Part shown: positions 2,258-26,208 of the stretch, piece by piece | How the letters are laid out: each line of letters opens with the position of its first letter | Position numbering within the stretch: the first letter of the stretch is position 1 | Source of the DNA: Haliotis rubra | Taxonomy: Eukaryota | NCBI RefSeq assembly: GCF_003918875.1 | Contig: NW_025767231.1 | Coordinates: 62,001-126,000, forward strand | Length of the DNA stretch: 64,000 bases | Direction: 5' to 3' | The notes under the pieces: generated by a model | The model's input: the letters and a program-made list of their open reading frames with translations, nothing else | Told to the model about the DNA's origin: nothing | The model's database searches: none | Position numbers and translations under genes: made by a program

Positions 2258-5200
2258 CATTCTGTTTGGCCACTTCTATCTTCTTGATGTTGGCAAGTCT
2301 GGAGAGACTGTCATGCAGCATGTACAGCAGCGTGTCAGAATGGCTCCCAGGAAATTCTGGGAACAGCAGGCAGCAGATCATGGAACATGTGAGACTTATC
2401 CACTACATACATCTTAGCTCTCAAAGATCTAATCAAAGGATATCCCATTACTGGTCATATTAAAATGACCTTTAGCAAAATTTGACAGACCAAAGGGATG
2501 GCAAACATAAGTTTCCACATTAGCAAATCATCTTCCTTAAGCAATACAACACTAGTTTCAAACTGGTGATTTCCGTTTCAGACTAAACTCTGGACAAAAA
2601 TTTTGTAAAACTCTCAACTCAATATCTGAAAAACTGAACACGAAAAAATTCTGGAATGTGTAAAACTTCCCACTGGCTATGAAAAATCTCCTCCATTTTA
2701 AAGCTGGAGATGATGATGATGATGATTTTGCCTGTAACTGACATTCCGCATACCCAGTGTTAAGCCTGATAAGAGAAAACAGATCTCACTTTCCGGGCCT
2801 GGTAAGTGATGCTCTTTTCAGTCCAATGAAAGATCTGATTTTACTGAGCATATGAGCAAAGACTCTTACCTGAAATATCTCCTTCTCACACTGCTGAACA
2901 ATAGATGTCCGACAGTCAGCCCTCCTCCACAGGTGTTCAATCAGTTTGCCAATCTCAGATCTGATATCAGAAAAACACACATCAGACTTTTGAAAGACAT
3001 GCTGTCTATGGTTAAGATTAAGACACAGAAAATGTTACTTGTATAGCAACATTCTAGAGTCAATATTATCCATTAGCTTCTTACCTGACGTGAATCCTGG
3101 TTCAGATCACCTCAACAAGCTTCATCTGAACACCTCTCCTCTACATCAGTAATGGACTAGTGCTGAATTATGTAATCCACATTTATTACAAAGTTGTTGA
3201 AATTCTTACCTTGCAGAGTATTTGTCAAACTCATCTTTGTCTACATCCAGGCCCTCAACAACATCGGCGGCTGGCGTGGAGTGCGGAGGAGGGCGAGCCT
3301 AGCTGGTTCTGTACTGATGGGCATGTCTCCACCATCGCAGCAAGATCAGACATGAGACCGCTGCCCCATCCTCTAGGTACACAACACATTATTACACAGA
3401 CATAAGACCGCTGCCCCATCCTCTAGGTACACAACACATTATTACACAGACATAAGACCGCTGCCCCATCCTCTAGGTACTGGGTACACATGAGACCACT
3501 GCCCAAACCTCAGGTACACAACACATCATTACACAGACATGAGACTGCTGCCCCATCCTCTTTGTACACAACACATCATTACACAGACATGAGACTGCTG
3601 CCCCATCCTCTAGGTACACAACACATCATTACACAGACATGAGACTGCTGCCCTGTCCTCTAGGTACACAACACATTATCACACAGACATGAGACCGTTA
3701 CCCAATCCTCTAGGTACACAACACATTATTACACAGACATGAGACCCGCTGCCCCATCCTCTAGGTATACAACACATTATCACACAGACATGAGACCACT
3801 GCCCCATCCTCTAGGTACACAACACATTATCCACACAGACATGAGACCATTACCCAATCCTCTAGGTACACAACACATTATCACACAGACATGAGACCGC
3901 TGCCCCATCCTCTAGGTACACAACACATTATGACACAGACATGAGACTGCTGCCCAAACCTCTAGGTACACAACACATCATTACACAGACATGAGACCAC
4001 TGCCCCATCCTCTAGGTACACAACACATTATCACACAGACATGAGACCGCTGCCCCATCCTCTAGGTACACAACACATCATTACACAGACATGAGACCGC
4101 TGCCCCATCCTCTAGGTACACAACACATCATTACACAGACATGAGACGCTGCCCCATCCTCTAGGTACACAACACATCATTACACAGACATGAGACCACT
4201 GCCCCATCCTCTAGGTACACAACACATTATTACACAGACATGAGACTGCTGCCCCATCCTCTAGGTACACCACACATTATCACACAGACATGAGACCACT
4301 GCCCCATCCTCTAGGTACACAACACATCATTACACAGACATGAGACCGCTGCCCCATCCTCTAGGTACACAACACATTATCACACAGACATGAGACTGTT
4401 ACCCCATCCTCTAGGTACACAACACATTATTACACAGACATGAGACCGCTGCCCCATCATCTAGGTACACAACACATTATCACACAGACATGAGACTGCT
4501 GCCCCATCCTCTAGGTACACAACACATTATCACACAGACATGAGACCGCTGCCCCATCCTCTAGGTACACAACACATTATCACACAGACAAAAGACCACT
4601 GCCCCATCCTCTAGGTACACAACACATTATTACACAGACATAAGACCGCTGCCCCATCCTCTAGGTACACAACACATTATCACACAGACAAAGACCACTG
4701 CCCCATCCTCTTGGTACACAACACATTATCACACAGACAAGAGACCGCTGCCCCATCTTCTAGGTACACAACACATCATTACACAGACATGAGACTGCTG
4801 CCCCGTCCTCTAGGTACACAACACATCATTACACAGACATGAGACTGCTGCCCCATCCTCTAGGTACACAACACATCATTACACAGACATGAGACTGCTG
4901 CCCCATCCTCTAGGTACACAACACATTATCACACAGACATTAGACCGTTACCCAATCCTCTAGGTACACAACTGACTGACTGACTGACTGAGTTTAGTTT
5001 TACGCCGCTTTTAGCAATATTCCAGCAATATCACGGCGGGGGACACCAGAAATGGGCTTAACACATTGTGCCCATGTGGGGAATCGAACCCGGGTCTTCG
5101 GCGTGACGAGCCAACGCTTTAACCACTAGGCTACCCCACCGCCCCCCTAGGTACACAACACATCATTACACAGACATGAGACCGCTACCCCATCCTCTTG

Positions 5201-8200
5201 GTACACAACACATCATTACACAGACATGAGACTGCTGCCCCATCCTCTAGGTACACAACACATCATTACACAGACATGAGACCGCTGCCCAATCCTCTAG
5301 GTACACAACACATTATCACACAGACATGACTGACTGACTGAGTTTAGTTTTACGCCGCTTTTAGCAATATTCCAGCAATATCACGGCGGGGGACACCAGA
5401 AATGGGCTTAACACATTGTGCCCATGTGGGGAATCGAACCCGGGTCTTCGGCGTGACGAGCCAACGCTTTAACCACTAGGCTACCCCACCGCCCCCACAG
5501 ACATGAGACCGCTGCCCCATCCTCTAGGTACACAACACATTATCACACAGACATGAGACCGTTACCCAATCCTCTAGGTACACAACACATTATCACACAG
5601 ACATGAGACTGTTACCCAATCCTCTAGGTACACAACACATTATCACACAGACATGAGACCTCACCCCATCCTCTAGGTACACAACACATCATAACACAGA
5701 CATGAGACCGCTGCCCCATCCTCTAGGTACACAACACATCATTACACAGACATGAGACCACTGCCCCATCCTCTAGGTACACAACACATTATCACACAGA
5801 CATGAGACCGCTGCCCCATCCTCTAGGTACACAACACATTATCACACAGACATGAGACCGTTACCCAATCCTCTAGGTACACAACACATTATCACACAGA
5901 CATGAGACTGTTACCCAATCCTCTAGGTACACAACACATTATCACACAGACATGAGACCTCACCCCATCCTCTAGGTACACAACACATCATAACACAGAC
6001 ATGAGACCGCTGCCCCATCCTCTAGGTACACAACACATCATTACACAGACATGAGACCACTGCCCCATCCTCTAGGTACACAACACATTATTACACAAAC
6101 ATGAGACCGTTACCCAATCCTCTAGGTATTGTTCATTGCTTTATTAACATTGACATGCTGATATTAATGTGTCACTGACCAAGAAGTTACATGCACTATT
6201 GTCATTCCAGAAATTTTGGGTACATACCTTGAGCTTTGCCTTTTTGATGAGTTGACAAACTGGAGCAAACAAGAGACCATCTTACTGGCAGGAATAGGAC
6301 CAGGCATGAGGTCAGGCCTCTCCAGGAGACTTACACAGCAGTCAACAAAGAAGGAGATCTGTGGACAGAGATAGCACCAGGCATGTCAGGCCTTTCTAGA
6401 AGACACACAACAAAGGAGGAGATCTGTGGACAGAGATAGGACCAGGCATGACGTCAGGTCTTTCTAGAAGACACACAACAAAGGAGGAGATCTGTGGACA
6501 GAGATAGGACCTGGCATGACGTCAGGTCTTTCTAGAAGACACACAACAAAGGAGGAGATCTGTGGACAGAGATAGGACCAGGCATGACATCAGGTCTTTC
6601 TAGAAGACACACAACAAAGGAGGAGATCTGTGGACAGAGATAGCACCAGGCATGTCAGGCCTTTCTAGAAGACACACAACAAAGGAGGAGATCTGTGGAC
6701 AGAGATAGGACCAGGCATGTCAGGCCTTTCTAGAAGAAAACACAACAAAGAAGGAGATCTGTGGACAGAGATAGCACCAGGCATGACGTCAGGTGTTTCT
6801 AGAAGACACACAACAAACGAGGAGATCTGTGGACAGAGATAGCACCAGGCATGTCAGGCCTTTCTAGAAGAAACACAACAAAGGAGGAGATCTGTGGACA
6901 CAGATAGGACCAGGCATGTCAGGCCTTTCTAGAAGAAACACAACAAAGGAGGAGATCTGTGGACAGAGATAGCACCAGGCATGGCGTCAGGTCTTTCTAG
7001 AAGACACACAACAAACAAGGAGAGGAGGAGATCTGTGGACAGAGATAGCACCAGGCATGTCAGGCCTTTCTAGAAGAAACACAACAAAGGAGGAGATCTG
7101 TGGACAGAGATAGGACCAGGCATGTCAGGCCTTTCTAGAAGAAACACAACAAAGGAGGAGATCTGTGGACAGAGATAGCACCAGGCATGTCAGGCCTTTC
7201 TAGAAGAAACACAACAAAGAAGGAGATCTGTGGACAGAGATAGGACCAGGCATGACGTCAGGTCTTTCTAGAAGACACACAACAAAGGAGGAGATCTGTG
7301 GACAGAGATAGGACCAGGCATGAGGTCAGGTCTTTCTAGAAGACACACAACAAAGGAGGAGATCTGTGGACAGAGATAGCACCAGGCATGACGTCAGGTG
7401 TTTCTAGAAGACACACAACAAACGAGGAGATCTGTGGACAGAGATAGCACCAGGCATGTCAGGCCTTTCTAGAAGAAACACAACAAAGGAGGAGATCTGT
7501 GGACAGAGATAGGACCAGGCATGTCAGGCCTTTCTACAAGAAACACAACAAAGGAGGAGATCTGTGGACAGAGATAGGACCAGGCATGTCAGGCCTTTCT
7601 AGAAGAAACACAACAAAGAAGGAGATCTGTGGACAGAGATAGGACCAGGCATGACGTCAGGTCTTTCTAGAAGACACACAACAAAGGAGGAGATCTGTGG
7701 ACAGAGATAGCACCAGGCATGTCAGGCCTTTCTAGAAGAAACACAACAAAGGAGGAGATCTGTGGACAGAGATAGCACCAGGCATGACGTCAGGTCTTTC
7801 TAGAAGACACACAACAAAGGAGGAGATCTGTGGACAGAGATAGGACCAGGCATGACGTCAGGTCTTTCTAGAAGACACACAACAAAGGAGGAGATCTGTG
7901 GACAGAGATAGCACCAGGCATGACGTCAGGTCTTTCTAGAAGAAACACAACAAACAAAGGAGATCTGTGGACAGAGATAGCACCAGGCATGTCAGGCCTT
8001 TCTAGAAGAAACACAACAAAGGAGGAGATCTGTGGACAGAGATAGGACCAGGCATGTCAGGCCTTTCTAGAAGAAACACAACAAAGGAGGAGATCTGTGG
8101 ACAGAGATAGGACCAGGCATGTCAGGCCTTTCTAGAAGAAACACAACAAAGAAGGAGATCTGTGGACAGAGATAGGACCAGGCATGACGTCAGGTCTTTC

Positions 8201-11200
8201 TAGAAGACACACAACAAAGGAGGAGATCTGTGGACAGAGATAGGACCAGGCATGACATCAGGTCTTTCTAGAAGAAACACACAACAAAGGAGGAGATCTG
8301 TGGACAGAGATAGCACCAGGCATGTCAGGCCTTTCTAGAAGAAACACAACAAAGGAGGAGATCTGTGGACAGAGATAGGACCAGGCATGTCAGGCCTTTC
8401 TAGAAGAAACACAACAAAGGAGGAGATCTGTGGACAGAGATAGCACCAGGCATGTCAGGCCTTCCTAGAAGAAACACAACAAAAGAGGAGATCTGTGGAC
8501 AGAGATAGCACCAGGCATGACGTCAGGTCTTTCTAGAAGAAACACAACAAAGGAGGAGATCTGTGGACAGAGATAGGACCAGGCATGACGTCAGGTCTTT
8601 CTAGAAGACACACAACAAAGGAGGAGATCTGTGGACAGAGATAGCACCAGGCATGACGTCAGGTCTTTCTAGAAGAAACACAACAAAGGAGGAGATCTGT
8701 GGACAGAGATAGCACCAGGCATGTCAGGCCTTTCTAAAAGACACACAACAAAGGAGGAGATCTGTGGACAGAGATAGGACCAGGCATGACGTCAGGTCTT
8801 TCTAGAAGAAACACAACAAAGAAGGAGATCTGTGGACAGAGATAGCACCAGGCATGTCAGGCCTTTCTAGAAGAAACACAACAAAGGAGGAGATCTGTGG
8901 ACAGAGATAGCACCAGGCATGACGTCAGGTCTTTCTAGAAGAAACACAACAAAGGAGGAGATCTGTGGACAGAGATAGCACCAGGCATGTCAGGCCTTTC
9001 TAGAAGAAACACAACAAAGGAGGAGATCTGTGGACAGAGATAGCACCAGGCATGTCAGGCCTTTCTAGAAGACACACAACAAAGGAGGAGATCTGTGGAC
9101 AGAGATAGCACCAGGCATGTCAGGTCTTTCTAGAAGAAACACAACAAAGGAGGAGATCTGTGGACAGAGATAGGACCAGGCATGTCAGGCCTTTCTAGAA
9201 GAAACACAACAAAGAAGGAGATCTGTGGACAGAGATAGGACCAGGCATGACGTCAGGTCTTTCTAGAAGAAACACAACAAAGGAGGAGATCTGTGGACAG
9301 AGATAGCACCAGGCATGTCAGGCCTTTCTAGAAGAAACACAACAAAGGAGGAGATCTGTGGACAGAGATAGCACCAGGCATGACGTCAGGTCTTTCTTGA
9401 AGAAACACAACAAAGGAGGAGATCTGTGGACAGAGATAGCACCAGGCATGTCAGGCCTTTCTAGAAGAAACACAACAAAGGAGGAGATCTGTGGACAGAG
9501 ATAGCACCAGGCATGTCAGGCCTTTCTAGAAGACACACAACAAAGGAGGAGATCTGTGGACAGAGATAGCACCAGGCATGTCAGGTCTTTCTAGAAGACA
9601 CACAACAAAGGAGGAGATCTGTGGACAGAGATAGGACCAGGCATGTCAGGCCTTTCTAGAAGAAACACAACAAAGAAGGAGATCTGTGGACAGAGATAGG
9701 ACCAGGCATGACGTCAGGTCTTTCTAGAAGAAACACAACAAAGGAGGAGATCTGTGGACAGAGATAGCACCAGGCATGTCAGGCCTTTCTAGAAGACACA
9801 CAACAAAGGAGGAGATCTGTGGACAGAGATAGCAGCAGGCATGTCAGGCCTTTCTAGAAGACACACAACAAAGGAGGAGATCTGTGGACAGAGATAGCAC
9901 CAGGCATGTCAGGCCTTTCTAGAAGAAACACAACAAAGAAGGAGATCTGTGGACAGAGATAGGACCAGGCATGACGTCAGGTGTTTCTAGAAGACACACA
10001 ACAAAGGAGGAGATCTGTGGACAGAGATAGCACCAGGCATGACGTCAGGTCTTTCTAGAAGAAACACAACAAAGAAGGAGATCTGTGGACAGAGAGAGGA
10101 CCAGGCATGTCAGGCCTTTCTACAAGACACATAACAAAGGAGGAGATATGTGGACAGAGATAGGACCAGGCATGTCAGGCCTTTCTAGAAGAAACACAAC
10201 AAAGGAGGAGATCTGTGGACAGAGAGAGGACCAGGCATGAGGACAGGCCTTTCTAGAAGACACACAACAAAGGAGGAGATCTGTGGACAGAGATAGCACC
10301 AGGCATGACGTCAGGTCTTTCTAGAAGACACACAACAAAGGAGGAGATCTGTGGACAGAGATAGCACCAGGCATGTCAGGCCTTTCTAGAAGAAACACAA
10401 CAAAGGAGGAGATCTGTGGACAGAGAGAGGACCAGGCATGTCAGGCCTTTCTACAAGACACATAACAAAGGAGGAGATATGTGAACCGAGATAGCACCAG
10501 GCATGAGGACAGGCCTTTCTAGAAGACACACAACAAAGGAGGAGATATGTGGACCGAGATAGGACCAGGCATGTCAGGCCTTTCTAGAAGAAACACAACA
10601 AAGGAAGAGATCTGTGGACAGAGAGAGGACCAGGCATGTCAGGCCTTTCTACAAGACACATAACAAAGGAGGAGATATGTGAACCGAGATAGCACCAGGC
10701 ATGAGGACAGGCCTTTCTAGAAGACACACAACAAAGGAGGAGATATGTGGACCGAGATAGGACCAGGCATGTCAGGCCTTTCTAGAAGAAACACAACAAA
10801 GGAAGAGATCTGTGGACACAGGATTGAGGGAGTTGAAAAACATGCTCAACAACATACAAATTCATGCATTTACAAGTCCATATGTAACCATGGAAACTCA
10901 CTGAAAGACCCTGGAGAACTCCCTTGTGGACGTAGACTGCATGGGTGGCCACAAACCGGAACCAGATGGCCATATCCTTCACACAGAACTCTGGTATCAT
11001 GGAAAAAGCCTTCTTCTCTGCCTTCACTTTCTCCTCATCACTTACTGATCCCTGTGAAAGAACAAGAACTAGATTAGAACAGAATTTACGTGTCTTATCA
11101 TGGACAATTTTGGTAATCTATTTGGAAGTGAAAGACAACTAGAAAGGTGTTGGCAGTTCATGCAGCAAACAGAAGCTACCCCAAACACACAATTTCCTGA

Positions 11201-14200: not shown

Positions 14201-17200
14201 GTAGTGCACGATGGTAGATGGGGACACCACACTTAGGGCTACTTACCTCTGCATCCTGTTGCAGTGCATGATGGTAGATGGGGACACCACACTAAGGGCT
14301 ACTTACCTCTGCATCCTGTTGCAGTGCATGATGGTAGATGGGGACACCACACTGATGGCTACTTACCTCTACATCCTGTTGCAGTGCATGATGGTAGATG
14401 GGGACACCACACTTAGGGCTACTTACCTCTGCATCCTGTTGTAGTGCATGGTGGTAGATGGGGACACCACACTGAGGGCTACTTACCTCTGCATCCTGTT
14501 GTAGTGCATGATGGTAGATGGGGACACCACACGGAGGGCTACTTACCTCTGCATCCTGTTGTAGTGCATGATGGTATATGGGGACACCAAACTAAGGGCT
14601 ACTTACCTCTGCATCCTGTTGTAGTGCATGATGGTAGATGGGGACACCACACAGGAGGAGGGCTACTTACCTCTGCATCCTGTTGTAGTGCATGATGGTA
14701 GATGGGGACACCACACTTAGGGCTACCTACCTCTGCATCCTGTTGCAGTGCATGATGGTAGATGGGGACACCACACTGAGGGCTACTTACCTCTGCATCC
14801 TGTTGTAGTGCATGATGGTAGATGGGGACACCACACTGAGGGCTACTTACCTCTGCATCCTGTTGCAGTGCATGATGGTAGATGGGGACACCACACTAAG
14901 GGCTACTTACCTCTGCATCCTGTTGTAGTGCATGATGGTAGATGGGGACACCACACTTAGGGCTACTCACCTCTGCATCCTGTTGTAGTGCATGATGGTA
15001 GATGGGGACACCACACTGAGGGCTACTTACCTCTGCATCCTGTTGTAGTGCATGATGGTAGATGGGGACACCACACTTAGGGCTACTTACCTCTGCATCC
15101 TGTTGTAGTGTATGATGGTAGATGGGGACACCACACTAAGGGCTACTCACCTCTGCATCCTGTTGTAGTGCATGATGGTATATGGGGACACCACACTTAG
15201 GGCTACTCACCTCTGCATCCTGTTGTAGTGCATGATGGTAGGTAGAACACCCACATTAAGAGCCCGCTGGATTAAGTGGAAACACTCTGTGATAAAGTTG
15301 TGTTGTGACTGTAGATCTTTCGGAACAGAGCCCAATCCTCGCTCTTCTGATGTGTCACTCACTGAAACCATTTTGCTTGATTTAGTACATGAAAGATTGT
15401 AAAAGAAAATGATGAAAATATATTTTTCATCAATGTGTAATGTATCCAGAAGTTTTGATAAGTTGAACATGATAAATGACTATGAGGCTATGTTATGACA
15501 AATCATGATGAACACTGTTATATGACAGTGATGTTAATATGTGCATAAGCAGATAAGACATAGCTGTAACACACCTATCTGTCCCCCAGCTAGACATGTC
15601 TCAAAGTCGTAGTTGAGCCGACATGCCTCTGACGTCGAGTATCCGAGGTTGACCTTGTCCAGCTTGCCCTTGTTGCTGTAGATTGGCAGGAAGAACTCCA
15701 GCAGCATCCCGCAGAAGTTCACCATGTATGCTAACAAGGAACATGCAGTGTTCTTAGGCATTTGTCAGGCACTTTAGGCATGCATCATACATTTGTCAAC
15801 TTTACCATTTCTTTAAAAACTGTCAATACAGTTTACAGCGTCAGATTAGTTGTGTTCTTTGATATTGATACCTGTATCAATATTCAGATATTGGATAGCT
15901 GTGAAATAAAAATATCACAGCATACATCATGACTCAAGTGTACATCATCACCATTATGGGGCCAAACTACAACCTGGGTCACTGAACCCTGACAGGGCCT
16001 CACCATCACCATTATGGGGACAACTGCAACCTGGGTCACTGAACCCTGACAGGGCCTCACCATCACTGCAGCAGGCTTGAACCTGGGAATCATTCTGTAG
16101 CAGGGCTGATGTGCGCAACTCGTTCAGGTTGATGACACTGGCGATCCAGGACAGGCCCTGCTCCCTCGACGCCCTGGAGGTTACAACCTTCTTCAGGGCA
16201 TTGTACACCACATTCCAACAACGATGAAGTCCCTCCTGGATTGCTGACTAGAAGCAGGAGTCAAGAATCGACAACTACGTTACACATTACTCAGTAGTAA
16301 ATAGGGTAGCATGTTTCACAAAAGTAAGCATGAGGTACTTTGGAAAGATACATTAAAACTAAGAGGTATATGAAAAGAAAATACCACATTTGAACAATAT
16401 CCTTATATTAGAGGGTAGCTAACACTTGGGTTTTTCAGCAAAAGAATACCTGCAATTACAAGTGGCAAAATGCCCTCAGGGTATAAATGAGGATTTCTCT
16501 CATGTTACATTTCATGCAATGAAGCATCTGATTTGAAGATGCTTATATCTAAGGTATGACCCGAGCCTCCCCGGATCCCAGTAGTTGGGTGTCTCGGTGC
16601 CTACTGGACTACCTGTGGACCCTCAATGATTCATTTCATATCAACACAGGCACAGAGTGACATCGCTTGCTGTACAAGGCTACTACTTCTCCACAAAACA
16701 CAAATATAAGGCCGCATGAACATACCTCAACAAGGTGGAGGTCTGACTCAGTGACTCGAGGGAAGCCTCTCATAGATGTAAATGGCGACGCTGCATTCCC
16801 TGTCAGGGTGATCTGACGCTTCGCTGGAACTTGGTTGGCACTGTGGACACCGCCAGAAGAGGTCCAAACAGGGATGACTTCTCAAAATAATTGCCCTGAT
16901 AAAGCAGAAGAATTAAGTTCACTAAGTGACAGTTTACTTAGTGTTGCGAAGTGTTGTGCTTCAACTAGCATGTTCAGTTTTCATGAAGTAATTTGCCTGA
17001 GCAGAACTGAGTCAAGTCTGTATTGTTGGTCTTCAAGTATCCTGATCTCTTAACACTGAAAATAAATGTCAGCTGGAACTCACCAGTCCCTTGGCAGCCT
17101 CAGGCACTTCCTTCTCTAGAGCAATTGCTAACACAGCTCCTGCAGTCCCCTGGAAACAGACGTGAGAGTTACTCCCCAAGATAACATCAGTTGCCAGTTA

Positions 17201-17699: not shown

Positions 17700-17735
<36 letters not shown>

Positions 17736-20700
17736 GAAATAAACATACGAATTATTGTGCATGAGAAAGCATCCCATCACTTGTGTTATTTTATCGATTG
17801 ATTGTAGAAATGTACAACGTTTTAATAATTGTTTTGCATGTCATTAGTATGTTTCTTTGCAAAAATATGGATGTAATTCGGTCAATTTAATCAAGTTGTG
17901 AACATTGGCCAAAGATTTAACGAAGCCACTGGTATAGCTTCCCAGTTTTGCTTTTGAGACTGTCCCTGTCTTGTCTGATTTGTTTAAAATATTGTTAACT
18001 TATTGGTAAGACATACCAACAGCTCTACAAGTTCTGTAATAAACCCTTTCTAAACTAATGAAAGGTTTACCTCTGTCTTTCTCAAGCACAAAAAAACTTA
18101 TAAACCTTTGCAACAATCGACTGCAAATAGTTGGCCATAGTGAACGCTGTGATAAAGATGTGCATGCATGACGGGAAACTTATTTATTAAGACTTAACAT
18201 TTATATTAATATTTCTTCAATAAAAAAACATAATTAAGTCAAGTAACACAAACATTCAACATTTTATTTGTTTGAGAAAAACATTAATTAATATTTTTGC
18301 ACCACCTGTATTATTAGCATAAATTTAAAGACCATTTCAGATTTCTCATGTTAAACTCTGAAAAAATCTTGAGTTGTTGTTTTGGTACCAAATTCTCTCC
18401 TGTAAACTGCCCTTTAAATGCATGGAAATGTTAAATCGATTGAAATAAAAATTAGGTACACTATAGGCGAGTTAATATATTGACAACATAGTACATTTAT
18501 CACCTTTATCAAAGTATTAAGGTTAAAAAGCATTTTTCTAGTATTTCCGACAGTACTTTAATCAATCTGCTGCCTTCAAGTCCATCCATCAGGTTGGAAA
18601 ATGTAAAACAGGCAAGTCAACAAATTAATTTCATCCAGTCAAGCTAAACATTTCAAAGAGTGGTGTATACTTAAGATGCCATGGTAATATGAACCAGGGT
18701 GTTTGAGTGAATGGGTGGGTAATGTCCAAACATTATTCCAGTTGTATTACAAAAGACCAGCTTATGTGTCAGAAAAGCTCAAATTAAGAAGATTTTTTTT
18801 TTTTATCTGAACCCATCTTACATTATCAAGTAGTATTTCCAGAGCTCTGAGCGTCTTGCCCTCCCTGAGAATCACTTCATCCATCCTGCAAGTGGAGCAG
18901 TACAGGTAATCAGCTCTTGTGATGTTCACCTTACTTCACACATAACATCATTAAACACTCCTGAACCAGCTGCTGCACAACTGAAGCATCTAACAGCTGG
19001 GTTCTGTCCTCCAGATACTTTAACATAAATTCATAAACTAAAGTATACAAAACATTCAGTTTCATGAAATGTGCATTTTCATTTTGATAAGATGAAACTT
19101 AAAAACTGATATTCTGCAGTTCTACACATAAACTCCTTGACATTTAGTTTTAATGCAAAGACTGATCACACACTGATCACAATATTGATCACACACATAC
19201 CGGTACACACATACCTCTCAACACTGGCTACTTGTTGACCTGCAGCCTGAAGCAACACAGTCAGGAATAGGACAGAGTTATCTTCCTTGGCAGCACCTGC
19301 ACTGTCCTCACTTTGCTGCAGTAACCTTGACAACAGGCTGGCAGGCACCTGAACACAGTCCTTCGACCACCCAGTCACACACAACAGGAAGTTCACAGCC
19401 TCACTCTGAAAGCAAATGGGAGAAGAAAAATCACAAAATTGTTATTTGTCAAATTGCAAATATGATGCGTGAAATCATTTCCCCAAATTTGGCTGTTATT
19501 TTCCTCTCCTGTACAAAGACACATGTGTATTACAAAACTAAAATCCCAACATAAGAATTATATGTGACATACAGATTCGCTTAAATACATGGCAACCATA
19601 TCTGTCTCTAGCATTATCATCAACAATGTCTGACACAAAAACTACAAAAGGGCCCCATAGTAGCACATGTAATAATTGGGGGACAGAACATGTCTTTATC
19701 AAAACAGTTAAATCTATACATGTACTTGAAAACACACTGGTCCTACTTACTGCAACGTGTGTATTGTCATAGTCAGACCACAGATCGTCATCCTCGGCAT
19801 TAGCTGACTCTACAGAAATAAGTATAGAGGCTCTCACTCAAACCGTTTACACACAATATGGCAAGAAACACAGAACTTTTACAAAAGTCTTTGCAGATGA
19901 CCATAAATTGATTGTATAAATTAAATAGTTGAATATACTAGGGCAGTCAACATTTGCAGGCCATGATCATATCAAGGGAAAGAGTTTCTACAAAATCTAC
20001 CAAGTACTTCTCTACACAGGTATGAGAGCTTGTCTGGAACAGCCTTAGTTAACTGCTGACAATGATGTCTGCAACAACTTTATTTAACAGCTGACAGTGA
20101 TGTCTGCAACAGCTTTAGTTAACAGCTGACAATGATGTCTGGAACAACTTTAGTTAACAGCTGACAATGATGTCTGGAACAGCTTTAGTTAACCGCTGAC
20201 AATGATGTCTGCAACAGCTTTAGTTAACCGCTGACAATGATGTCTGCAACAGTTTTAGTTAACAGCTGACAATGATATCTGCAACAACTTTAGTTAACAG
20301 CTGACAATGATGTCTGGAACAGCTTTAGTTAACCGCTGACAATGATGTCTGTAACAGCTTTAGTTAACCGCTGAAAATGATGTCTGCAACAGCCTTAGTT
20401 AATAGCCGACAATGATGTCTGGAACAACTTTAGTTAACCGCTGACAATGATGTCTGCAACAACTTTAGTTAACTGCTGACAATGATGTCTGGAACAGCCT
20501 TAGTTAACAGCTGACAATGATGTCTGGAACAGCCTTAGTTAACAGCTGACAATGATGTCTGCAACAGCCTTAGTTAACAGCTGACAATGATGTCTGGAAC
20601 AGCTTTAGTTAACAGCTGACAATGATGTCTGCAACAGCCTTAGTTAACAGCTGACAATGATGTCTGGAACAGCTTTAGTTAACAGCTGACAATGATGTCT

Positions 20701-23700
20701 GCAACAGCCTTAGTTAACAGCTGACAATGATGTCTGCAACAGCCTTAGTTAACAGCTGACAATGATGTCTGCAACAGCTTTAGTTCACAGCTGACAATGA
20801 TGTCTGCAACAGCTTTAGTTAACCGCTGACAATGATGTCTGCAACAGCTTTAGTTAACAGCTGACAGTGATGTCTGCAACAGCTTTAGTTAACCGCTGAC
20901 AATGATGTCTGGAACAACTTTAGTTAACAGCTGACAATGATGTCTGGAACAGCTTTAGTTAACAGCTGACAATGATGTCTGCAACAGCCTTAGTTAACCG
21001 CTGACAATGATGTCTGCAACAGCTTTAGTTAACCGCTGACAATGATGTCTGGAACAACCTTAGTTAACAGCTGACAATGATGTCTGGAACAGCCTTAGTT
21101 AACAGCTGACAATGATGTCTGGAACAGCTTTAGTTAACAGCTGACAATGATGTCTGGAACAACTTTAGTTAACAGCTGACAATGATGTCTGCAACAGCTT
21201 TAGTTAACAGCTGACAATGATGTCTGGAACAGCCTTAGTTAACAGCCGACAATGATGTCTGGAACAGTTTTAGTTAACAGCTGACAATGATATCTGCAAC
21301 AACTTTAGTTAACCGCTGACAATGATGTCTGGAACAGCCTTAGTTAACAGCTGACAATGATGTCTGCAACAGCTTTAGTTAACAGCTGACAATGATATCT
21401 GCAACAACTTTAGTTAACAGCTGACAATGATGTCTGGAACAGCTTTAGTTAACAGCTGACAATGATGTCTGCAACAGCTTTAGTTAACAGCTGACAATGA
21501 TGTCTGGAACAGCCTTAGTTAACAGCCGACAATGATGTCTGGAACAGCCTTAGTTAACAGCTGACAATGATGTCTGGAACAGCCTTAGCCAACAGCTGAC
21601 AATGATGTCTGGAACAGCTTTAGTTAACAGCTGACAATGATGTCTGGAACAGTTTTAGTTAACAGCTGACAATGATGTCTGGAACAACTTTAGACAATAT
21701 TTTTGCATGGCCTCTAATATTCTAACAATGTTCCACTGTTTGATTGAAGATGTATAATTTTTCGTCAAATGAGTTGGGTTTTTCAATCCTTTAAAAATAT
21801 TCAAGTCTGATGTCTTGAAAAAACTTGAAACTTTGTTTTTTCAAACACTGATAAAAAGATGAATGTAACATATGACTTAAGACAACAACATCAACTTGCA
21901 GTTGATAACATTATTAGGATGGGTCATATACTGGAACGGAAATCAGCAAGTTTACTTATGCCGCCACCAGTTTGTGCCAGGCTACATTGTTAGCTGAAGT
22001 GTCGTGAAGAAGTGTGACAGCGTGTCTCACCTGTCTTGAGGCTGTCCATGATGACCCCAACACTGTACTGTTTCAGCCAGTCACCTGCAGCAGTCACCAG
22101 GTGGTCATTGTAGTGAGGCTGGAACTCCTCACAGATGCTGTAACACTTCATGATGTATTTGATGTGACTAATCTGACGTGGAACTATCTTCTTCATTACT
22201 TCAACCAGGAAGGCTGGGATACCAGCAGGCTGTTCGGGTACATCCTTAGCATTGATGGTGAGACTTCCTAGGCTGTACCTGATCTTCCCTGTGGTGGTGA
22301 TGTCCTAACAAGGAACATATGTTATGTAGGACTTCTAGGTTGTACATAGGCACAATGTGTGAAGCCCGTTTCTGGTGTCCCCCGCCGTGATATTGCTGGA
22401 ATATTGCTAAAACAGCATATAACCAAACTCACTCACTCTCTCTAGGTTGTAAAACCATTACTCATGATTCATGGCCATTTTAGTCAGAAGGGCCATGAGG
22501 TACCAAACACTTATGAGTGCAATCAGTTGAGATTCATATTGTCAGGTCTTTCTATGTAAGAGTCACCCCTCAGAGCTTCTGTTGTAGTAGCATGGATGCT
22601 GTCACAAGATGGCCGTATATATTTGCAAGATTAACCATTACATATAAAATAAACTGTCAGATTAAACAAACCATACACTTGAAACTTGGATTTGCCCACA
22701 AAATCACATATGTTACTGAAATATTACTAGACTGCAGTCCCTGAAACAAGTTGGTTAGAAACACACCAATGTCAAGTACATCACCATCAAATAACCATTT
22801 CTTGTTTGTTCCACTTTAAGCCACCATCAAACACAGGTGTAGGCTTTCTTTGGCCAAGCAGTTTATATTCAGTTTGTAATAAAATTATGTTCTGGAACAG
22901 AAGAAGGATCACTGATGCACTCTAATACAGGTTTCATGAATGATAGTCTGTTTTTTGTCATGCTATACAGTAAATGTTTTCATCAGAATCTCAATTATAA
23001 TGGAAATGATATACTCACTATGGTGGAGTCGAGAACACTGGACAGGAACTGTCGTAAATTATTCTTGTTTGATGTTGCTGGTGCTCTCTGTGCTTGTGCT
23101 GTTTGTCTGTGTGTACTTGATACTAAGTCCTCAGTGGAATCAGCAGATCCACCTTGTGATATATCTGGTTTCCCTCTTACAATCTGTTTCTGGTTATGTT
23201 GGGGCTGATCAGACATCTCTGCTGGGTCTGTACCAGTAAGACTGATGCCAACTTTCATCTGGGACTGGGTAGACATACTTTCACACTGGGTAAACATACT
23301 TTCACACTGGGTAGACATACTTTCACACTGGGTAGACATACTTTCACACTCGTCTGTTTGTTCAACTGGCTTCAGCTGATCAGATTTGTCTTCACTCTTC
23401 TCAGCTTGTTGGTCAGTTTTGAATTCTGGTTTGTCTGTAGTGTTTTGTAATGTTTGTGTGTCGTCTGTTGGAACTAGGTCAGGTCTTGATATTTGTGCTT
23501 TGCTCTTTGTATTATTTCTGGCAGTAGATAATGGTGTGGATTGTTTGGAATTGTTCAACCTTCTCTGTTGATTGTGAGCCACATTCTGACTGGACATCTT
23601 GTCTAGCCATTCCTCTCTTCTCTTCAACAATAATCCTGAGAAACAAGTAGCAACAAAATACCATCAGAAAGAGGTTCACAGGAGTTCCCAATATAATGAA

Positions 23701-25889
23701 ATTCTGTCTGGTTTATACAATGCTGTTTCACAGCTAGACTGACATTTAGTCCAAGAAACACTGTATCTTTTCTCAAACTATGTCATTACAAAACAATAAC
23801 ATCCAAACGGAGACCTGAACAATTCAAACTTCAGCTGAGCTTAGGCAACATAGACTTGCCCAATCATTGTACACTTGAGGTAGTCTCTGTTTTCAGTTTA
23901 TCCTCTAGGGTGTGGAACACTAACCAGATGGGTTGTTAACTCACAATAAGTTCAAGAAGAAACTATCCATTATCTAAAATATATATCTACAAAAACAATA
24001 AATACCATCCAAAAGGAGCCAGAACAATTCATCATGTCAGGTTAGCTGAGCATCTAATCTTGCCAAGTAATTCCACAGTTAGACTACAAGGATGTTGAGA
24101 AGAATATGTCTTTTCTGGTTCATTCTCGTATCAACAATGCAACTCACTCTCTGCGTCTGGAGACATTGGAGTAGGGGCAGGAGTCTGCTGCCTTTTCATC
24201 ACGCCAGCAGCAAGCACCAACACTACACCTCCACCAATCACAGACAACAATATATAGTTGGTGGTGTTCTTCTCCGTCTGTTCTGAAGCAGCTACATCAG
24301 GCTGAAAGTTGCACACATCAGGATATGAAAAGTACAGGTCACACTTTCTTATTGAAAGGTTGACAGATTTGCTAACTGATATGACTTGATTTGGGAGTTT
24401 ATTCAAGCAAAACCAAAATATTCAGGATGTTTACTAGTAATATCAGTGGCCCTTTTGTCCAAATATAATGTGGCACAAGATTGTATATAAATTATATAAA
24501 TTCACATTACTCAATATTATTCAGAAAGTTTCATTTTGCAATTGGATATTACATTTAAATAATCCATCAAAGCACTATAATATTATATTCTATGATTGTG
24601 ATCTTCTGCAACAATTGTTTGAATGCAAAAAAAACAACAAGTCCTTCTTTATAGTAGCATGGATAAAGTGGGCATTGGAACACTGATTGTTGACATGTAA
24701 AGTGTGTACATACATCAAAACATACTTGTCTTACCTTCTCCGTCTCGTCATCTGCTCTGTCAGGATCCTTCCTCAGTTCCTTCTGTTTCCGTCTCACTGC
24801 TGATGATATCTCCCCTCTTCCAAGCTCAAGTTCATCCTCGCTCAGCTCTCCATTATCATCTATGTCATACTTTTTCAGAATTGCCTGAATGTCCTCCTAC
24901 AAGGTACCAACCAGACGATACTGTCTCACTACATAGTTACTGACATCACAGAATGTACACGTAGAGTGGGAGGCAAGCCCAAACTGATGCAGGTGTTAGA
25001 CATGTATTACTATGATGAAAGATATTAAAGGACAAACCAAGAAACATGAAAAGGTGAATCAGGAATAACACCCACAGGATCCTCTCATGCCTAAGGGAGG
25101 TGAGTCTGTACAACAAATTGGGCAGACATAGATGACTTGGCCACCTATCCTTTAAGTTTCAATCAAGGATTCATGATTCAAATGAGCAAGTTGCCACTTT
25201 ACTGAGAAGTAAGGCTTTGCTCCTGTGTACAAGTTCCTACCTCCTCCAGCAAGTCTGCCAGGCCAATGTCATCTCCTTCTTCAGCATTGTACCAAGCTTC
25301 CTCATCAATGCACATGGTCACCACAGTGACCAAAGTTATTACCAATAAAAACCTGAAAATCAATAAAGAGCATATTTACTCAACATAGCTAGGCTTGGCA
25401 CTCATCAATCAACTAATAAATAGACACATTTTGAAGACTAATTATTAATCATTACAAAGTATGTTACAGACTAAACCAAACGCATTAAAATATACTGATT
25501 ACATAAATCACATTTGCTGTTAGTGAATGTTTGCCTAATAAATATCAGTTTGACTTGCCAGCCTGTACATAACGTACTAGCTACTAGTATAATATACATA
25601 ATATACAGTAGATGTTATTAAAGAAATTGTTGCAAGCCTTATTTAGGACTTAAAGGACTTAAACCTTTTAGTGACAATATCATCCCAGAGTTGATGTCCG
25701 ATAAATACATTGTCATAAGTGTTGATTTTTGAAAATGTTGGCTGTGCCTAATTTTCCACGTTGACTTTACAATTGTAAACAAACAATATTCTCGAGTTTT
25801 GCCAAAGAAAAGGACATTAAGGCTGTTGAGAACTTCGACTTTAAACGACACTATTTCTCAACACGTATTCGTAACACTCACCGAAACAT
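2258..25889 (-). CDS. Ubiquitin conjugation factor E4 (Ufd2/UBE4A/UBE4B family)-like protein with N-terminal signal peptide, EF-hand and single TM helix; 3' end, including the expected U-box, lies beyond the left edge
   Basis: Exons (GT-AG, phase-consistent): 25882-25889, 25241-25352, 24735-24896, 24148-24301, 23019-23635, 22031-22304, 19751-19809, 19215-19405, 18822-18885, 17084-17149, 16726-16895, 16061-16247, 15575-15730, 15211-15361, 12343-12412, 11908-12024, 10902-11051, 6228-6358, 3210-3372, 2870-2960, 2258-2356 (about 1064 codons). Ufd2-core-like motifs in the expected order: YIMKCYS, FEKSSLFGPLL, REQGLSWIASVINLNELR, SDAYMVNFCGMLLEFFLP, HNFITECFHLIQRAL, FSMIPEFCVKDMA, GPIPASKMVSCL, EFDKYSARSEIGKLIEHLW, LYMLHDSLSRLANIKKIE. 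Three exons need 1-nt indel corrections. Confidence 0.85.
4971..5146 (-). mobile_element. tRNA-derived SINE (family A), full length
   Basis: Minus strand: A box TAGCCTAGTGG, B box GGTTCGATTCC, tRNA-Asp-like head, (CAGT)n tail; TSD CTAGGTACACAAC. Confidence 0.9.
5328..5496 (-). mobile_element. tRNA-derived SINE (family A), full length
   Basis: Body identical to the copy at 4971-5146; different TSD (ACAGACATGA). Confidence 0.9.
6294..10820 (-). repeat. Splice-acceptor tandem array, 65/68-bp units, about 67 copies
   Basis: Minus-strand unit ctctgtccacag|ATCTCCTCCTTTGTTGTGTGTCTTCTAGAAAGGCCTGAC(GTC)ATGCCTGGT(G/C)CTAT, a diverged copy of the acceptor and first ~65 nt of exon 6228-6358. Confidence 0.95.
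12105..12300 (-). mobile_element. Probable degraded SINE/LINE 3' fragment with (TTA)n tail
   Basis: (AAT)n run next to the motif GGTACCCATTCACTGCTGGGTGAACAGAGG...TTGCCTAAGG, reminiscent of invertebrate SINE bodies; from recall only. Confidence 0.35.
12676..15240 (-). repeat. Splice-donor tandem array, 60-bp unit, about 40 copies
   Basis: Minus-strand unit TACCATCATGCACTACAACAGGATGCAGAG|gt(a/g)agtagccc...agtgtggtgtccccatc, which is the last 30 nt of exon 15211-15361 plus its donor. Confidence 0.95.
12754..12912 (-). mobile_element. SINE family B, 5'-truncated, inserted in the donor array
   Basis: (GAGT)n tail plus body shared with 26718-26927 and 41650-41835. Confidence 0.85.
15946..16066 (-). 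repeat. Two-copy 57-bp duplication at the donor of exon 16061-16247
   Basis: GTGATG|gtgaggccctgtcagggttcagtgacccagg occurs at the real donor (16061/16060) and again 57 bp downstream (16004/16003). Confidence 0.85.
17299..18557. mobile_element. Non-autonomous DNA transposon, Kolobok-like
   Basis: About 40-bp TIRs AGTACTGTCGGAAAT(G/A)CT..AAAATGCTTTTT; flanked by CTAA and TTAA (TTAA-type target, AG termini); no ORF. Confidence 0.7.
20030..21693. repeat. Intronic minisatellite, 35-bp unit, about 47 copies
   Basis: Unit AACAGCTTTAGTTAACAGCTGACAATGATGTCTGG; mid-intron, with no exon-derived sequence. Confidence 0.95.
22345..22440 (+). mobile_element. SINE family A, 5'-truncated
   Basis: Body and tail match 4971-5146 in the opposite orientation; TSD TCTAGGTTGTA. 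Confidence 0.85.
23019..23635 (-). CDS. E4-like gene exon 5: long low-complexity cytosolic linker
   Basis: tctcag|GATTATTG acceptor (phase 1) and ATA|gtgagt donor; matches ORF 22995-23630; ends in LRQFLSSVLDSTI. Confidence 0.8.
23266..23350 (-). repeat. Coding 21-bp tandem repeat x4 (ESMSTQC)
   Basis: (ACTGGGTAGACATACTTTCAC)n inside exon 23019-23635. Confidence 0.9.
24148..24301 (-). CDS. E4-like gene exon 4: sequon and transmembrane helix
   Basis: PDVAASEQTEK-NTT-N-YILLSVIGGGVVLVLAAGVM-KRQQ: NxT sequon, 20-residue hydrophobic stretch (24197-24256), basic KR on the C-terminal side. Confidence 0.8.
24735..24896 (-). CDS. E4-like gene exon 3: EF-hand
   Basis: EDIQAILKKY-DIDDNGELSEDE-LELGR; the loop (24831-24866) has D1, D3, N5, G6, L8, S9, E12, matching the canonical Ca2+-binding EF-hand consensus. 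Confidence 0.8.
25241..25889 (-). CDS. E4-like gene exons 1-2: signal peptide and acidic segment
   Basis: ATGTTTCG|gtgagt spliced to ttttcag|GTTTTTATTG gives MFRFLLVITLVTVVTMCIDEEAWYNAEEGDDIGLADLLEE: a basic residue followed by a hydrophobic core, as in a cleavable signal peptide. Confidence 0.7.
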
Positions 25890-26168: not shown

Positions 26169-26208
26169 AAGATATGCCTATAAAAAAATTGCAAAGTAAC
26201 CAATTATG

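What the first reader, a model, noticed from the sequence alone, without database searches (positions are those of the whole stretch)
2258..25889. Membrane-anchored Ufd2/UBE4-type E4 ligase with a luminal EF-hand: a candidate Ca2+-sensing ubiquitin ligase
Seen in the sequence: phase-consistent splicing of exons 1-5 gives a signal peptide (aa 1-~17), an acidic luminal domain with a canonical EF-hand loop DIDDNGELSEDE (aa 51-62), an NTT sequon (aa 106), a TM helix YILLSVIGGGVVLVLAAGVM (aa 110-129), then KR and a ~200-aa disordered linker. Sixteen further exons follow with Ufd2-core motifs in the expected order. Established: yeast Ufd2 and vertebrate UBE4A/UBE4B are soluble U-box E4 enzymes that work with Cdc48/p97, including in ERAD, and have no signal peptide, TM or EF-hand. 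Signal peptide plus luminal EF-hand plus one TM plus a cytosolic effector is the layout of STIM ER Ca2+ sensors. Inference: this divergent paralogue is an ER or plasma-membrane type I protein that could couple luminal or extracellular Ca2+ to cytosolic ubiquitin-chain elongation. I know of no characterised protein with this architecture, but cannot search.
Basis: partly seen in the sequence, partly recalled or inferred. Interest (0 to 1): 0.9.

Follow-up and report, generated by a model that had tools for sequence, protein, structure and literature searches.

The report
Membrane-anchored Ufd2-core/E2 hybrid ubiquitin enzyme
This abalone gene really does join a signal peptide, a calcium-binding EF-hand and a membrane helix to a Ufd2-type ubiquitin chain-extension core, but its catalytic end is a built-in BIRC6-like E2 domain rather than a U-box, and the design is conserved across animals yet appears unstudied.

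Summary
Observation confirmed. All 21 in-window exons have AG/GT borders. One correction: the exon 3 donor is at 24726, not 24735.

Interpretation partly supported. The window matches Haliotis rubra LOC124253228. Intact orthologues (1523-1532 aa in three other Haliotis species, plus chiton, amphioxus, annelid, brachiopod and cnidarians) share one layout:
- signal peptide, canonical EF-hand loop, TM helix;
- a short arginine-rich helix, then a disordered linker;
- a full Ufd2 N-region and core (Pfam E about 1e-100);
- a BIRC6-type UBC (E2) domain with its catalytic Cys.

No U-box is present. The sponge cDNA model shares the layout up to the core, with a Pfam-significant EF-hand pair, but stops before the C-terminus. 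A chytrid fungus has a TM anchor without an EF-hand. The post-TM helix fits the p97/VCP-binding motif in most phyla and is altered in molluscs.

My reading is a membrane-tethered, self-contained E2/E4 hybrid. Ca2+ sensing is untested. I found no paper on this architecture.

Caveat: the H. rubra assembly has three frame breaks inside the window and a fourth outside it. A relative-rate test shows no relaxed constraint, so assembly indels are more likely than pseudogenisation.

The scan's other note on this locus (s1-329701) concerns only the intron repeats.

The parts
25882..25986 (-). Exon 1: 5' UTR seen in RNA up to at least 25986, with a 6-codon uORF at 25963-25943. The main ATG is at 25889-25887; only 8 nt are coding.
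   Evidence: RNA contig X2 record 6 covers 25882-25986; sequence read; translation.
25241..25352 (-). Exon 2: rest of the signal peptide (aa 1-17 end at about 25310) and start of the acidic ectodomain.
   Evidence: Joints 25882/25352 and 25241/24896 in RNA; hydropathy peak at aa 1-5 windows.
24726..24896 (-). Exon 3: EF-hand helix-loop-helix. The expressed donor is at 24726; 24735 is used only in the annotated isoform X2.
   Evidence: RNA joint 24301/24726 in X1-X3; Pfam EF-hand_1 at 18.6 bits, below the 25.4 cut-off.
24831..24866 (-). Canonical 12-residue EF-hand loop DIDDNGELSEDE (aa 51-62).
   Evidence: D1, G6 and E12 are invariant and L8 nearly invariant across 18 mollusc and cnidarian orthologues. 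AF2 gives helix 41-50, loop, helix 60-83 at pLDDT about 81-84.
24148..24301 (-). Exon 4: NTT sequon, TM helix and a basic stop-transfer KR.
   Evidence: RNA joints on both sides; translation.
24197..24256 (-). Transmembrane helix YILLSVIGGGVVLVLAAGVM (aa 113-132 of the 602-aa form).
   Evidence: Kyte-Doolittle 19-residue mean up to 2.54; AF2 helix 107-132; a TM at the equivalent place in orthologues.
23019..23635 (-). Exon 5: juxtamembrane helix and about 200 aa of low-complexity linker.
   Evidence: RNA joints 24148/23635 and 23019/22304; only 52% identity to H. cracherodii here.
23595..23633 (-). Conserved post-TM motif LLLKRREEWLDKM, the mollusc form of a VBM-like (p97/VCP-binding-motif-like) helix.
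   Evidence: R and L are the conserved columns in the alignment. psi-RxxRxx[RK] is present 15-25 aa after the TM in amphioxus, Owenia, cnidaria, sponge and chytrid, and near the N-terminus of the TM-less Lingula model. Molluscs carry RExWLx[KR]. AF2 helix 142-173.
23264..23305 (-). 42-nt (14-aa) copy-number polymorphism in the CESMSTQ tandem repeat of the linker.
   Evidence: Skipped in RNA contigs X1-X3 and in DNA contig X5.
22031..22304 (-). Exon 6: first structured Ufd2 N-terminal region exon.
   Evidence: RNA joint; phmmer finds Gigantopelta P0004 aa 392-474 at 47% identity.
19751..19809 (-). Exon 7.
   Evidence: Junction-wise spliced alignment to H. cracherodii P0006; AG/GT.
19215..19405 (-). 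Exon 8.
18822..18885 (-). Exon 9.
17084..17149 (-). Exon 10.
16726..16895 (-). Exon 11, with a 1-nt loss at 16823/16822 relative to orthologues (TKFQ|KRQITL). The RefSeq 599/602-aa models end at the resulting stop.
   Evidence: Sequence; frames; orthologue peptides; P0001/P0129 ends.
16061..16247 (-). Exon 12: start of Ufd2P_core.
   Evidence: Pfam Ufd2P_core E 4.2e-05, profile 39-97; splice sites.
15575..15730 (-). Exon 13: Ufd2P_core.
   Evidence: Pfam E 2.5e-04, profile 90-145.
15211..15361 (-). Exon 14: Ufd2P_core.
   Evidence: Pfam E 3.8e-07, profile 104-189.
12343..12412 (-). Exon 15.
11908..12024 (-). Exon 16.
10902..11051 (-). Exon 17.
6228..6358 (-). Exon 18.
   Evidence: 97.7% identity to P0006 aa 893-936.
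3210..3372 (-). Exon 19, with a complex frame break at 3295-3262 inside the otherwise highly conserved LGPALLRTYVSVDVVEGLDVDK segment. The RefSeq 202-aa model ends here.
   Evidence: Sequence; orthologue peptides; P0134 end.
2870..2960 (-). Exon 20.
   Evidence: 100% identity to P0006 aa 990-1020; sequence.
2258..2356 (-). Exon 21, the last in the window, with a 1-nt loss at 2336/2335 (NFLGAIL|DTLLYML). The gene continues left of the window for about 470 more aa, including the UBC domain.
   Evidence: Sequence. P0006 aligns only to aa 1053 of 1523. H. rubra model P0133 starts in this exon and runs to the UBC start.

Best explanation
The locus is the Haliotis rubra member of an uncharacterised eukaryotic family in which a complete Ufd2 (E4) N-region and core is followed by a BIRC6-type UBC (E2) domain instead of a U-box. 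In animals this unit sits behind a signal peptide, a short acidic ectodomain with one canonical EF-hand (a pair in the sponge, none in amphioxus or Owenia) and one TM helix.

Shown here:
- The exon structure, and the splicing of the membrane module to the Ufd2 part.
- The domain identities.
- Conservation of the EF loop, the TM, the post-TM helix and the catalytic Cys.

Inferred:
- Topology is type I, with the EF-hand luminal or extracellular and the Ufd2 core plus UBC cytosolic.
- The enzyme is charged directly by an E1 on its own UBC cysteine. It uses the Ufd2 core to hold an already ubiquitinated client or acceptor ubiquitin, so it extends or branches chains at a membrane without a separate E2.
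- The arginine-rich helix 15-25 residues after the TM recruits p97/VCP, as the N-terminal VBM of UBE4B does. This would couple chain extension to extraction of membrane or ER clients.
- The EF-hand binds Ca2+. Whether that is structural or regulatory is open.

The four frame breaks in the H. rubra assembly are most likely assembly indels.
For: - Transcript continuity: RNA joints at all five N-terminal junctions, equal exon depth of about 3-6, zero intron depth, and one contig spanning exons 2-6.
- Domains: Ufd2P_core E 8e-100 and UQ_con E 2e-22 in H. cracherodii, with similar values in H. asinina, Gigantopelta, amphioxus, Nematostella and a chytrid. No U-box.
- H. rubra's own fragments carry Ufd2P_core positions 222-363 and 453-627.
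- Sequence matches in the PDB: BIRC6 UBC E 2.6e-73 over 240 residues, with GKVCLS and the 5-residue insertion loop aligned without gaps. Yeast Ufd2 E 3e-24.
- AF2 model of the cytosolic part: pLDDT 84, pTM 0.83. Foldseek finds yeast Ufd2 (E 1e-18, about 950 columns) and BIRC6 UBC (TM 0.85).
- The catalytic Cys and RFNPNLY..GKVCLSLLGTW are nearly invariant in 40 sequences.
- N-terminal module: found in gastropods, chiton, cnidarians and sponge. EF-loop positions D1, G6 and E12 are invariant. The sponge EF pair is above the Pfam cut-off.
- The VBM consensus psi-RxxRxxR and the N-terminal VBM of UBE4B are documented in PMC5559722 and PMC2654131. The motif is matched after the TM in five non-mollusc lineages and near the N-terminus of the TM-less Lingula model.
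- No relaxed constraint in H. rubra: 15 rubra-specific versus 48 asinina-specific residue changes, and 2 versus 9 downstream of the first break.
Against: - No biochemical or localisation data exist for any member.
- The UBC domain is outside the window. H. rubra's own model breaks at its start.
- The assembled gene has frame breaks that I could not check with reads. One search failed; no run held all sampled words.
- The EF-hand scores below Pfam gathering thresholds in Haliotis and is absent in amphioxus and Owenia.
- In molluscs the middle Arg of the VBM-like motif is Trp and the aliphatic position is basic, so p97 binding by the abalone protein is doubtful.
- Some database models (Littorina, Lingula) start after the TM. 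Soluble isoforms may therefore exist.
- The target membrane is unknown; no retention signal was seen.
Confidence: 0.72

Rival explanations
1. One reading: a type I membrane U-box E4 (UBE4A/B paralogue) whose luminal EF-hand senses Ca2+, STIM-like, and gates cytosolic chain elongation.
For: The membrane and EF-hand layout is real and conserved. The canonical loop residues are under purifying selection across phyla.
Against: There is no U-box in any orthologue; the catalytic domain is a UBC. There is no SAM or other domain to convert Ca2+ loss into oligomerisation, and the ectodomain is only about 90 aa. The EF-hand was lost in amphioxus and Owenia while the rest is kept. A canonical loop is expected to be saturated in ER or extracellular Ca2+ (established knowledge of EF-hand affinities, not tested).
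Confidence: 0.12
2. Exons 1-4 are a separate small EF-hand membrane-protein gene, and the joined RNA is read-through or an assembly chimera.
For: Without splicing, exon 4 would run into a stop 8 codons later. The Littorina and Lingula models lack the module.
Against: Spliced joints 24148/23635 and 23019/22304 occur in three independent RNA runs, with no coverage downstream of the exon 4 donor. The same fusion is seen in gene models or transcript-derived proteins of gastropods, chiton, cnidarians and sponge.
Confidence: 0.03
3. The H. rubra copy is a recently inactivated pseudogene or null allele. The frame breaks are real and only a 602-aa SP-EF-TM-linker stub could be made.
For: There are three breaks inside the window and one outside. 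RefSeq splits the locus into several models. No sequencing run held all sampled words over the exon 11 site.
Against: There are only 2 rubra-specific residue changes in 460 codons downstream of the first break, versus 9 in H. asinina, and no in-frame stops within the exon pieces. All 21 splice sites are intact. The gene is transcribed and spliced. Two breaks are single-base losses. From memory, unverified here, this assembly is Nanopore-based.
Confidence: 0.13

Closest known systems
Ufd2 / UBE4B (E4 ubiquitin chain-elongation factors)
   Same: Full N-terminal region plus Ufd2P_core. Pfam E about 1e-100 in orthologues, Foldseek E 1e-18 to yeast Ufd2 over about 950 columns. In most phyla the cytosolic part begins with a psi-RxxRxx[RK] helix, like the N-terminal VCP-binding motif of UBE4B.
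   Different: No U-box, so it cannot recruit a separate E2 in the Ufd2 manner; it carries its own UBC domain instead. It has a signal peptide, EF-hand and TM. Only 16-19% identity to yeast Ufd2 in the structural alignment.
BIRC6 (BRUCE/Apollon), giant E2/E3 chimera
   Same: The UBC domain is very similar: phmmer E 2.6e-73, about 40% identity in the structural alignment, TM 0.85. This includes the N- and C-terminal helical extensions, the catalytic Cys context GKVCLS and the 5-residue insertion loop (GGHSV in BIRC6, GGGSV here) that gates E1 choice in human BIRC6.
   Different: No BIR domain, no giant armadillo/WD40 scaffold and no IAP function. The substrate-holding part is a Ufd2 core. It is membrane anchored.
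UBE2O (E3-independent E2)
   Same: A large E2 hybrid with a related UBC domain (E about 1e-38). PMC12818219 calls BIRC6 and UBE2O the only two E3-independent E2s.
   Different: Different substrate-binding regions. UBE2O is soluble.
STIM1/2 ER Ca2+ sensors
   Same: The order signal peptide, EF-hand, single TM, cytosolic effector.
   Different: No SAM domain and no detectable homology. A single EF-hand in molluscs and cnidarians. No evidence of low-affinity sensing.
ER-membrane ubiquitin enzymes that recruit p97 (HRD1 with a VBM, gp78 with a VIM) and the tail-anchored E2s UBE2J1/2 (Ubc6)
   Same: The concept of membrane-bound ubiquitination machinery with a short arginine-rich p97-binding helix, or a membrane-bound E2.
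   Different: Those are polytopic RING E3s or C-terminally tail-anchored small E2s. None has a Ufd2 core or a luminal EF-hand.

Membership tests
Ufd2/UBE4 E4 family | Ufd2P_core helical domain (PF10408) | tested here: met
   Window exon pieces hit PF10408 collinearly, best E 3.8e-07. H. rubra fragments score E 6e-12 and 3e-35. Orthologues score E about 1e-100 over profile 1-627. The fold matches yeast Ufd2.
Ufd2/UBE4 E4 family | C-terminal U-box directly after the core | tested here: not met
   No PF04564 hit at E<=1 in P0006, in its 1190-1300 linker, or in P0004, P0016, P0031, P0051. None in P0132 or H. rubra P0133 at E<=0.01. The AF2 linker is almost entirely helical, with one 4-residue strand. 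The region lies outside the window itself.
UBC (E2) superfamily, BIRC6/UBE2O/UBE2Z clade | UBC fold with catalytic Cys in the (H/F)PN...GxxCLxxL context | tested here: met
   Met in orthologues. UQ_con E about 2e-22. BIRC6 UBC E 2.6e-73 with the Cys aligned. The Cys is nearly invariant in 40 family members. TM 0.85 to 3CEG. For H. rubra the domain is outside the window, and the available model breaks at its start.
EF-hand Ca2+-binding motif | 12-residue loop with D/N/S ligands at positions 1, 3, 5, Gly at 6, hydrophobic at 8 and Glu at 12, flanked by helices | tested here: met
   DIDDNGELSEDE fits at every position. The same pattern holds in 18 orthologues. AF2 gives helix-loop-helix.
EF-hand Ca2+-binding motif | Pfam EF-hand model above its gathering score | tested here: not met
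   18.6 bits against a cut-off of 25.4 for the window exon. The sponge orthologue's pair passes, 34.3 against 30.
EF-hand Ca2+-binding motif | Actual Ca2+ binding | not testable with these tools
   Needs ITC or a 45Ca overlay on the ectodomain.
STIM-like Ca2+ sensors | EF-hand pair packed on a luminal SAM domain | tested here: not met
   No SAM hit in Pfam. The ectodomain is about 95 aa, with one EF-hand followed by a disordered acidic stretch.
VBM (VCP/p97-binding motif) cofactors | Helical psi-RxxRxxR motif (consensus from PMC5559722) | tested here: inconclusive
   psi-RxxRxx[RK] is matched in amphioxus, Owenia, Lingula, six cnidarians, sponge and chytrid. Haliotis has KRREEWLDK, with the middle R replaced by W and no aliphatic residue before the first R. 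The segment is predicted helical. Binding was not tested.

The most novel reading that the evidence does not exclude
This gene represents a third class of self-contained giant E2 hybrid, beside BIRC6 and UBE2O. It would be an ancestral animal 'E2-E4' enzyme, anchored in a membrane, that recruits p97 through a juxtamembrane VBM and extends or branches ubiquitin chains with its own UBC cysteine. A luminal or extracellular EF-hand would make its activity or assembly respond to Ca2+. No vertebrate or ecdysozoan member appeared among the named hits, which would explain why it has escaped study.
Probability: 0.2. Interest if true: 0.9.

Novelty: new variant of a known kind. Interest (0 to 1): 0.72.

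Why it matters
Ufd2-type E4s are understood as U-box adaptors that borrow a free E2. BIRC6 and UBE2O are described as the only E3-independent E2 hybrids (PMC12818219). Here the U-box-plus-E2 pair is replaced by a covalently attached BIRC6-type E2 on a Ufd2 scaffold, a natural experiment in how chain-extending enzymes can be built.

In animals the unit is tethered to a membrane, with a Ca2+-binding motif on the far side and, in most phyla, a p97-binding motif on the near side. That points to an unstudied route for membrane or ER protein extraction and degradation.

Members occur in tractable species (Nematostella, amphioxus). No vertebrate, arthropod or nematode member appeared among the named database hits. 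This offers a testable case of pathway loss and a new enzyme for ubiquitin-chain biochemistry.

A practical point: RefSeq splits the H. rubra gene into at least three models. All members seen are labelled 'uncharacterized' or 'UBE4B-like'.

Tried and rejected
- A greedy exon-extension script over-extended exons and stalled. I replaced it with junction-by-junction spliced alignment to the H. cracherodii protein.
- I tried to test the exon 11 frame break through the read index. A 62-nt query had too few sampled words. A 131-nt query found only DNA runs of other organism labels, holding at most 5 of 7 words.
- A core-only homologue search returned only 25 proteins and almost no canonical UBE4A/B. 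No phylogeny against UBE4A/B could be built, so the relation to UBE4B rests on domain content and the shared VBM-like start.
- Literature searches for a membrane, EF-hand or UBC-fused Ufd2 found nothing relevant. The Biomphalaria UPS survey mentions only a ufd-2 sequence with Ufd2P_core.
- A degenerate U-box in the 75-aa core-UBC linker was rejected: no Pfam hit at E<=1 and an almost entirely helical model.
- The NTT sequon as a conserved feature was rejected: it is absent in H. cracherodii and H. asinina.
- The scan's own notes held nothing on Ufd2 or UBC for this genome.
Full report
**What is in the window**

The gene lies on the minus strand.
- a hydrophobic signal peptide;
- an acidic segment with the loop DIDDNGELSEDE;
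- an NTT sequon;
- the helix YILLSVIGGGVVLVLAAGVM followed by KR;
- a long low-complexity linker.

Hydropathy shows only two strongly hydrophobic segments, at aa 1-20 and about 110-132. The segment between them carries 31 acidic and 13 basic residues.

**Transcript evidence**

Three RNA runs (X1-X3) have zero depth in the introns. One DNA run (X5) has even depth of about 14 throughout. All four were laid on 21500-26150.
- Exon 3 is spliced from 24726, not 24735. This adds Val-Arg-Gln in frame and corresponds to RefSeq isoform X1 of 602 aa.
- One contig (X3 record 8, 1287 nt) runs from exon 6 through exon 2.
- Another (X1 record 1, 1211 nt) runs from exon 5 through exon 6 and 354 nt further, off the laid stretch.
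- Depth is similar on the membrane-module exons and the following exons. Nothing is expressed in intron 4, so there is no sign of a separate promoter for the Ufd2 part in these samples.
- A 42-nt copy-number difference in the CESMSTQ repeat occurs in both RNA and DNA, so it is a polymorphism.

**The rest of the gene in the window**

Stop-free pieces hit Pfam Ufd2P_core in collinear order. Using the intact H. cracherodii protein as a guide, I placed 21 exons between 25889 and 2258, all with AG/GT borders. The guide protein aligns only up to residue 1053 of 1523. About 470 residues, including the catalytic domain, therefore lie left of the window.

**What the protein is**

A phmmer search with exon 6 found the window's own truncated model and a 1567-aa Gigantopelta protein. 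That protein has the same signal peptide, EF-hand, TM and linker start, and a C-terminus that reads as a UBC domain.
- Pfam on it gives Ufd2P_core over the whole profile (E 2e-96) and UQ_con (E 5e-22), with no U-box.
- The same holds for H. cracherodii, H. asinina, amphioxus, Nematostella and a chytrid.
- Against the PDB, the C-terminal 309 residues of the H. cracherodii protein match the BIRC6 UBC domain at E 2.6e-73 over 240 residues. The catalytic GKVCLS and the five-residue insertion loop are aligned without gaps. UBE2O and UBE2Z follow.
- The preceding 876 residues match yeast Ufd2 at E 3e-24.
- An AlphaFold model of the cytosolic 1184 residues is confident (pLDDT 84, pTM 0.83). It has almost only helices between the core and the UBC sheet.
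- Foldseek returns yeast Ufd2 over about 950 columns and the BIRC6 UBC domain at TM 0.85.
- The UBC signature and its cysteine are nearly invariant in a 40-sequence family alignment.

**Distribution**

Core-plus-UBC proteins, all labelled uncharacterised, occur in these groups:
- Animals: gastropods, a chiton, amphioxus, the annelid Owenia, the brachiopod Lingula and several cnidarians.
- Non-animals: a chytrid fungus and many protists.
- A Sycon sponge cDNA model has the same N-terminal layout and core but is truncated before the C-terminus, so its UBC domain is not seen.
- No vertebrate, arthropod or nematode protein appeared among the named hits.

The N-terminal module varies by group:
- A signal peptide, a canonical EF loop and a TM are present in all gastropod models but one, plus the chiton and the cnidarians. 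The exception is the Littorina model, which starts just after the TM position.
- In an 18-sequence alignment, loop positions 1, 6 and 12 are invariant and position 8 nearly so, while the rest of the ectodomain is free to vary.
- The sponge has two EF loops that pass Pfam's pair model.
- Amphioxus and Owenia keep the signal peptide and TM but have no EF-hand.
- The chytrid has an N-terminal TM anchor only.
- Protist members are soluble.

**A conserved cytosolic helix after the TM**

Fifteen to twenty-five residues after the TM, these lineages carry the following motifs:
- cnidarians: VRAARLRKL;
- amphioxus: LRAQRLAKL (twice);
- Owenia: VREARLARF;
- sponge: VRSTRLERLARL;
- chytrid: IRRLRVEKL.

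The TM-less Lingula model carries LRNARLSKL twice, the first copy near its N-terminus. All of these fit the published p97/VCP-binding motif psi-RxxRxxR (PMC5559722). UBE4B carries such a motif in its first 16 residues (PMC2654131).

Molluscs have a conserved but altered form, RE(E/A)WLx(K/R). In the window this is KRREEWLDK. The AlphaFold model of the first 175 residues makes this segment a helix. It also gives a helix-loop-helix around the EF loop and a TM helix, although the overall model is only moderately confident.

**How it most likely works**

Shown:
- One transcript encodes a membrane module joined to a Ufd2 scaffold.
- Intact orthologues end in a catalytically equipped BIRC6-type E2 domain.

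Inferred:
- The signal peptide, a single TM and a basic stop-transfer place the EF-hand on the luminal or extracellular side and the enzyme in the cytosol.
- The Ufd2 core holds ubiquitinated clients or acceptor ubiquitin. This is established for yeast Ufd2, which binds K29 chains and adds K48 branches, as summarised in PMC5559722.
- The attached UBC cysteine supplies ubiquitin directly, so no U-box or free E2 is needed.
- The VBM-like helix brings p97 to the membrane in most lineages.

The retained insertion loop determines UBA6 rather than UBA1 charging in human BIRC6 (PMC13623948). This hints at a particular E1 pairing but is only a lead, since a solved structure shows Drosophila BIRC6 in complex with UBA1 (PDB 9qgg title).

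Ca2+ binding by the loop is likely from its conservation. Ca2+ sensing is not supported by any further feature. The loss of the EF-hand in two lineages argues that it is an accessory.

**The frame breaks**

Compared with intact orthologues, the assembled H. rubra sequence differs at three in-window sites:
- it lacks one base in exon 11 (16823/16822);
- it has a cluster of indels and T-to-C differences in exon 19 (3295-3262), inside one of the most conserved peptides of the family;
- it lacks one base in exon 21 (2336/2335).

A fourth break lies outside the window at the start of the UBC domain. RefSeq accordingly splits the locus into models of 599/602, 202 and 285 aa.

I used the North Pacific species as outgroup for a relative-rate test. 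H. rubra has 15 lineage-specific residue changes against 48 in H. asinina, and only 2 against 9 downstream of the first break. All splice sites are intact and the gene is expressed. Four indels with so few substitutions fit assembly errors better than decay. I could not verify this with reads, so I keep a 0.13 probability for a real null allele.

**Comparison with what is known, and novelty**

- The protein works like a Ufd2-type E4 and contains its core, but it fails the U-box criterion.
- Its catalytic domain is a member of the BIRC6/UBE2O/UBE2Z branch of E2s, but it has none of the other BIRC6 domains.
- The STIM resemblance is one of layout only.
- I found no paper describing a Ufd2 core fused to a UBC domain, or a membrane-anchored or EF-hand-bearing Ufd2 relative.
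- A recent paper still counts BIRC6 and UBE2O as the only E3-independent E2s.

I therefore rate it a new variant of known kinds, not a categorically new system. Interest is fairly high because the architecture is old, conserved, experimentally approachable and unstudied.

Noticed in passing
window 6343-10818, 3347-6128, 12913-15241, 15946-16066, 20031-21693, 1-2167: Six introns of this one gene hold large tandem arrays, with these period x copy numbers: 65 nt x 67, 50 nt x about 55, 60 nt x 39, 57 nt x 2, 35 nt x 47 and 42 nt x 51. At least four arrays start at or overlap an exon border. Their units are copies of the adjacent exon edge plus its splice site: tblastn finds dozens of copies of aa 893-914, 763-780 and 936-944 of the orthologue.
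   Followed up: partly
window 22352-22412: A short element in intron 5 has an enormous summed contig depth in all runs (tens of thousands in RNA runs, millions in the DNA run) and many loose ends. It looks like a very high-copy SINE-like repeat that is also transcribed elsewhere.
   Followed up: no
window 23264-23305: A 42-nt (14-aa) copy-number polymorphism in the CESMSTQ coding repeat of the linker. The shorter allele is present in three RNA runs and one DNA run.
   Followed up: partly
window 25943-25963: A six-codon upstream ORF (ATGGAGGTATCTGTAAATTGA) lies in the transcribed 5' UTR, 54 nt before the main start codon.
   Followed up: no
window 26180-26420: Two near-identical copies of a roughly 120-nt unit lie just upstream of the transcribed exon 1. 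Each carries a long (CT)n microsatellite; the second also has (GT)n.
   Followed up: no
proteins P0068 and P0069 (protist transcripts): A different fusion exists in some protists: Ufd2P_core plus an intact U-box, followed by two ordinary UQ_con stretches. Ufd2 scaffolds have therefore been joined to E2 domains more than once.
   Followed up: partly
H. rubra RefSeq models XP_046542907-12: One gene is annotated as three loci (602/599 aa, 202 aa, 285 aa 'UBE4B-like') because of frame breaks in the assembly. The UBC exon region seems to have no model joined to them.
   Followed up: partly
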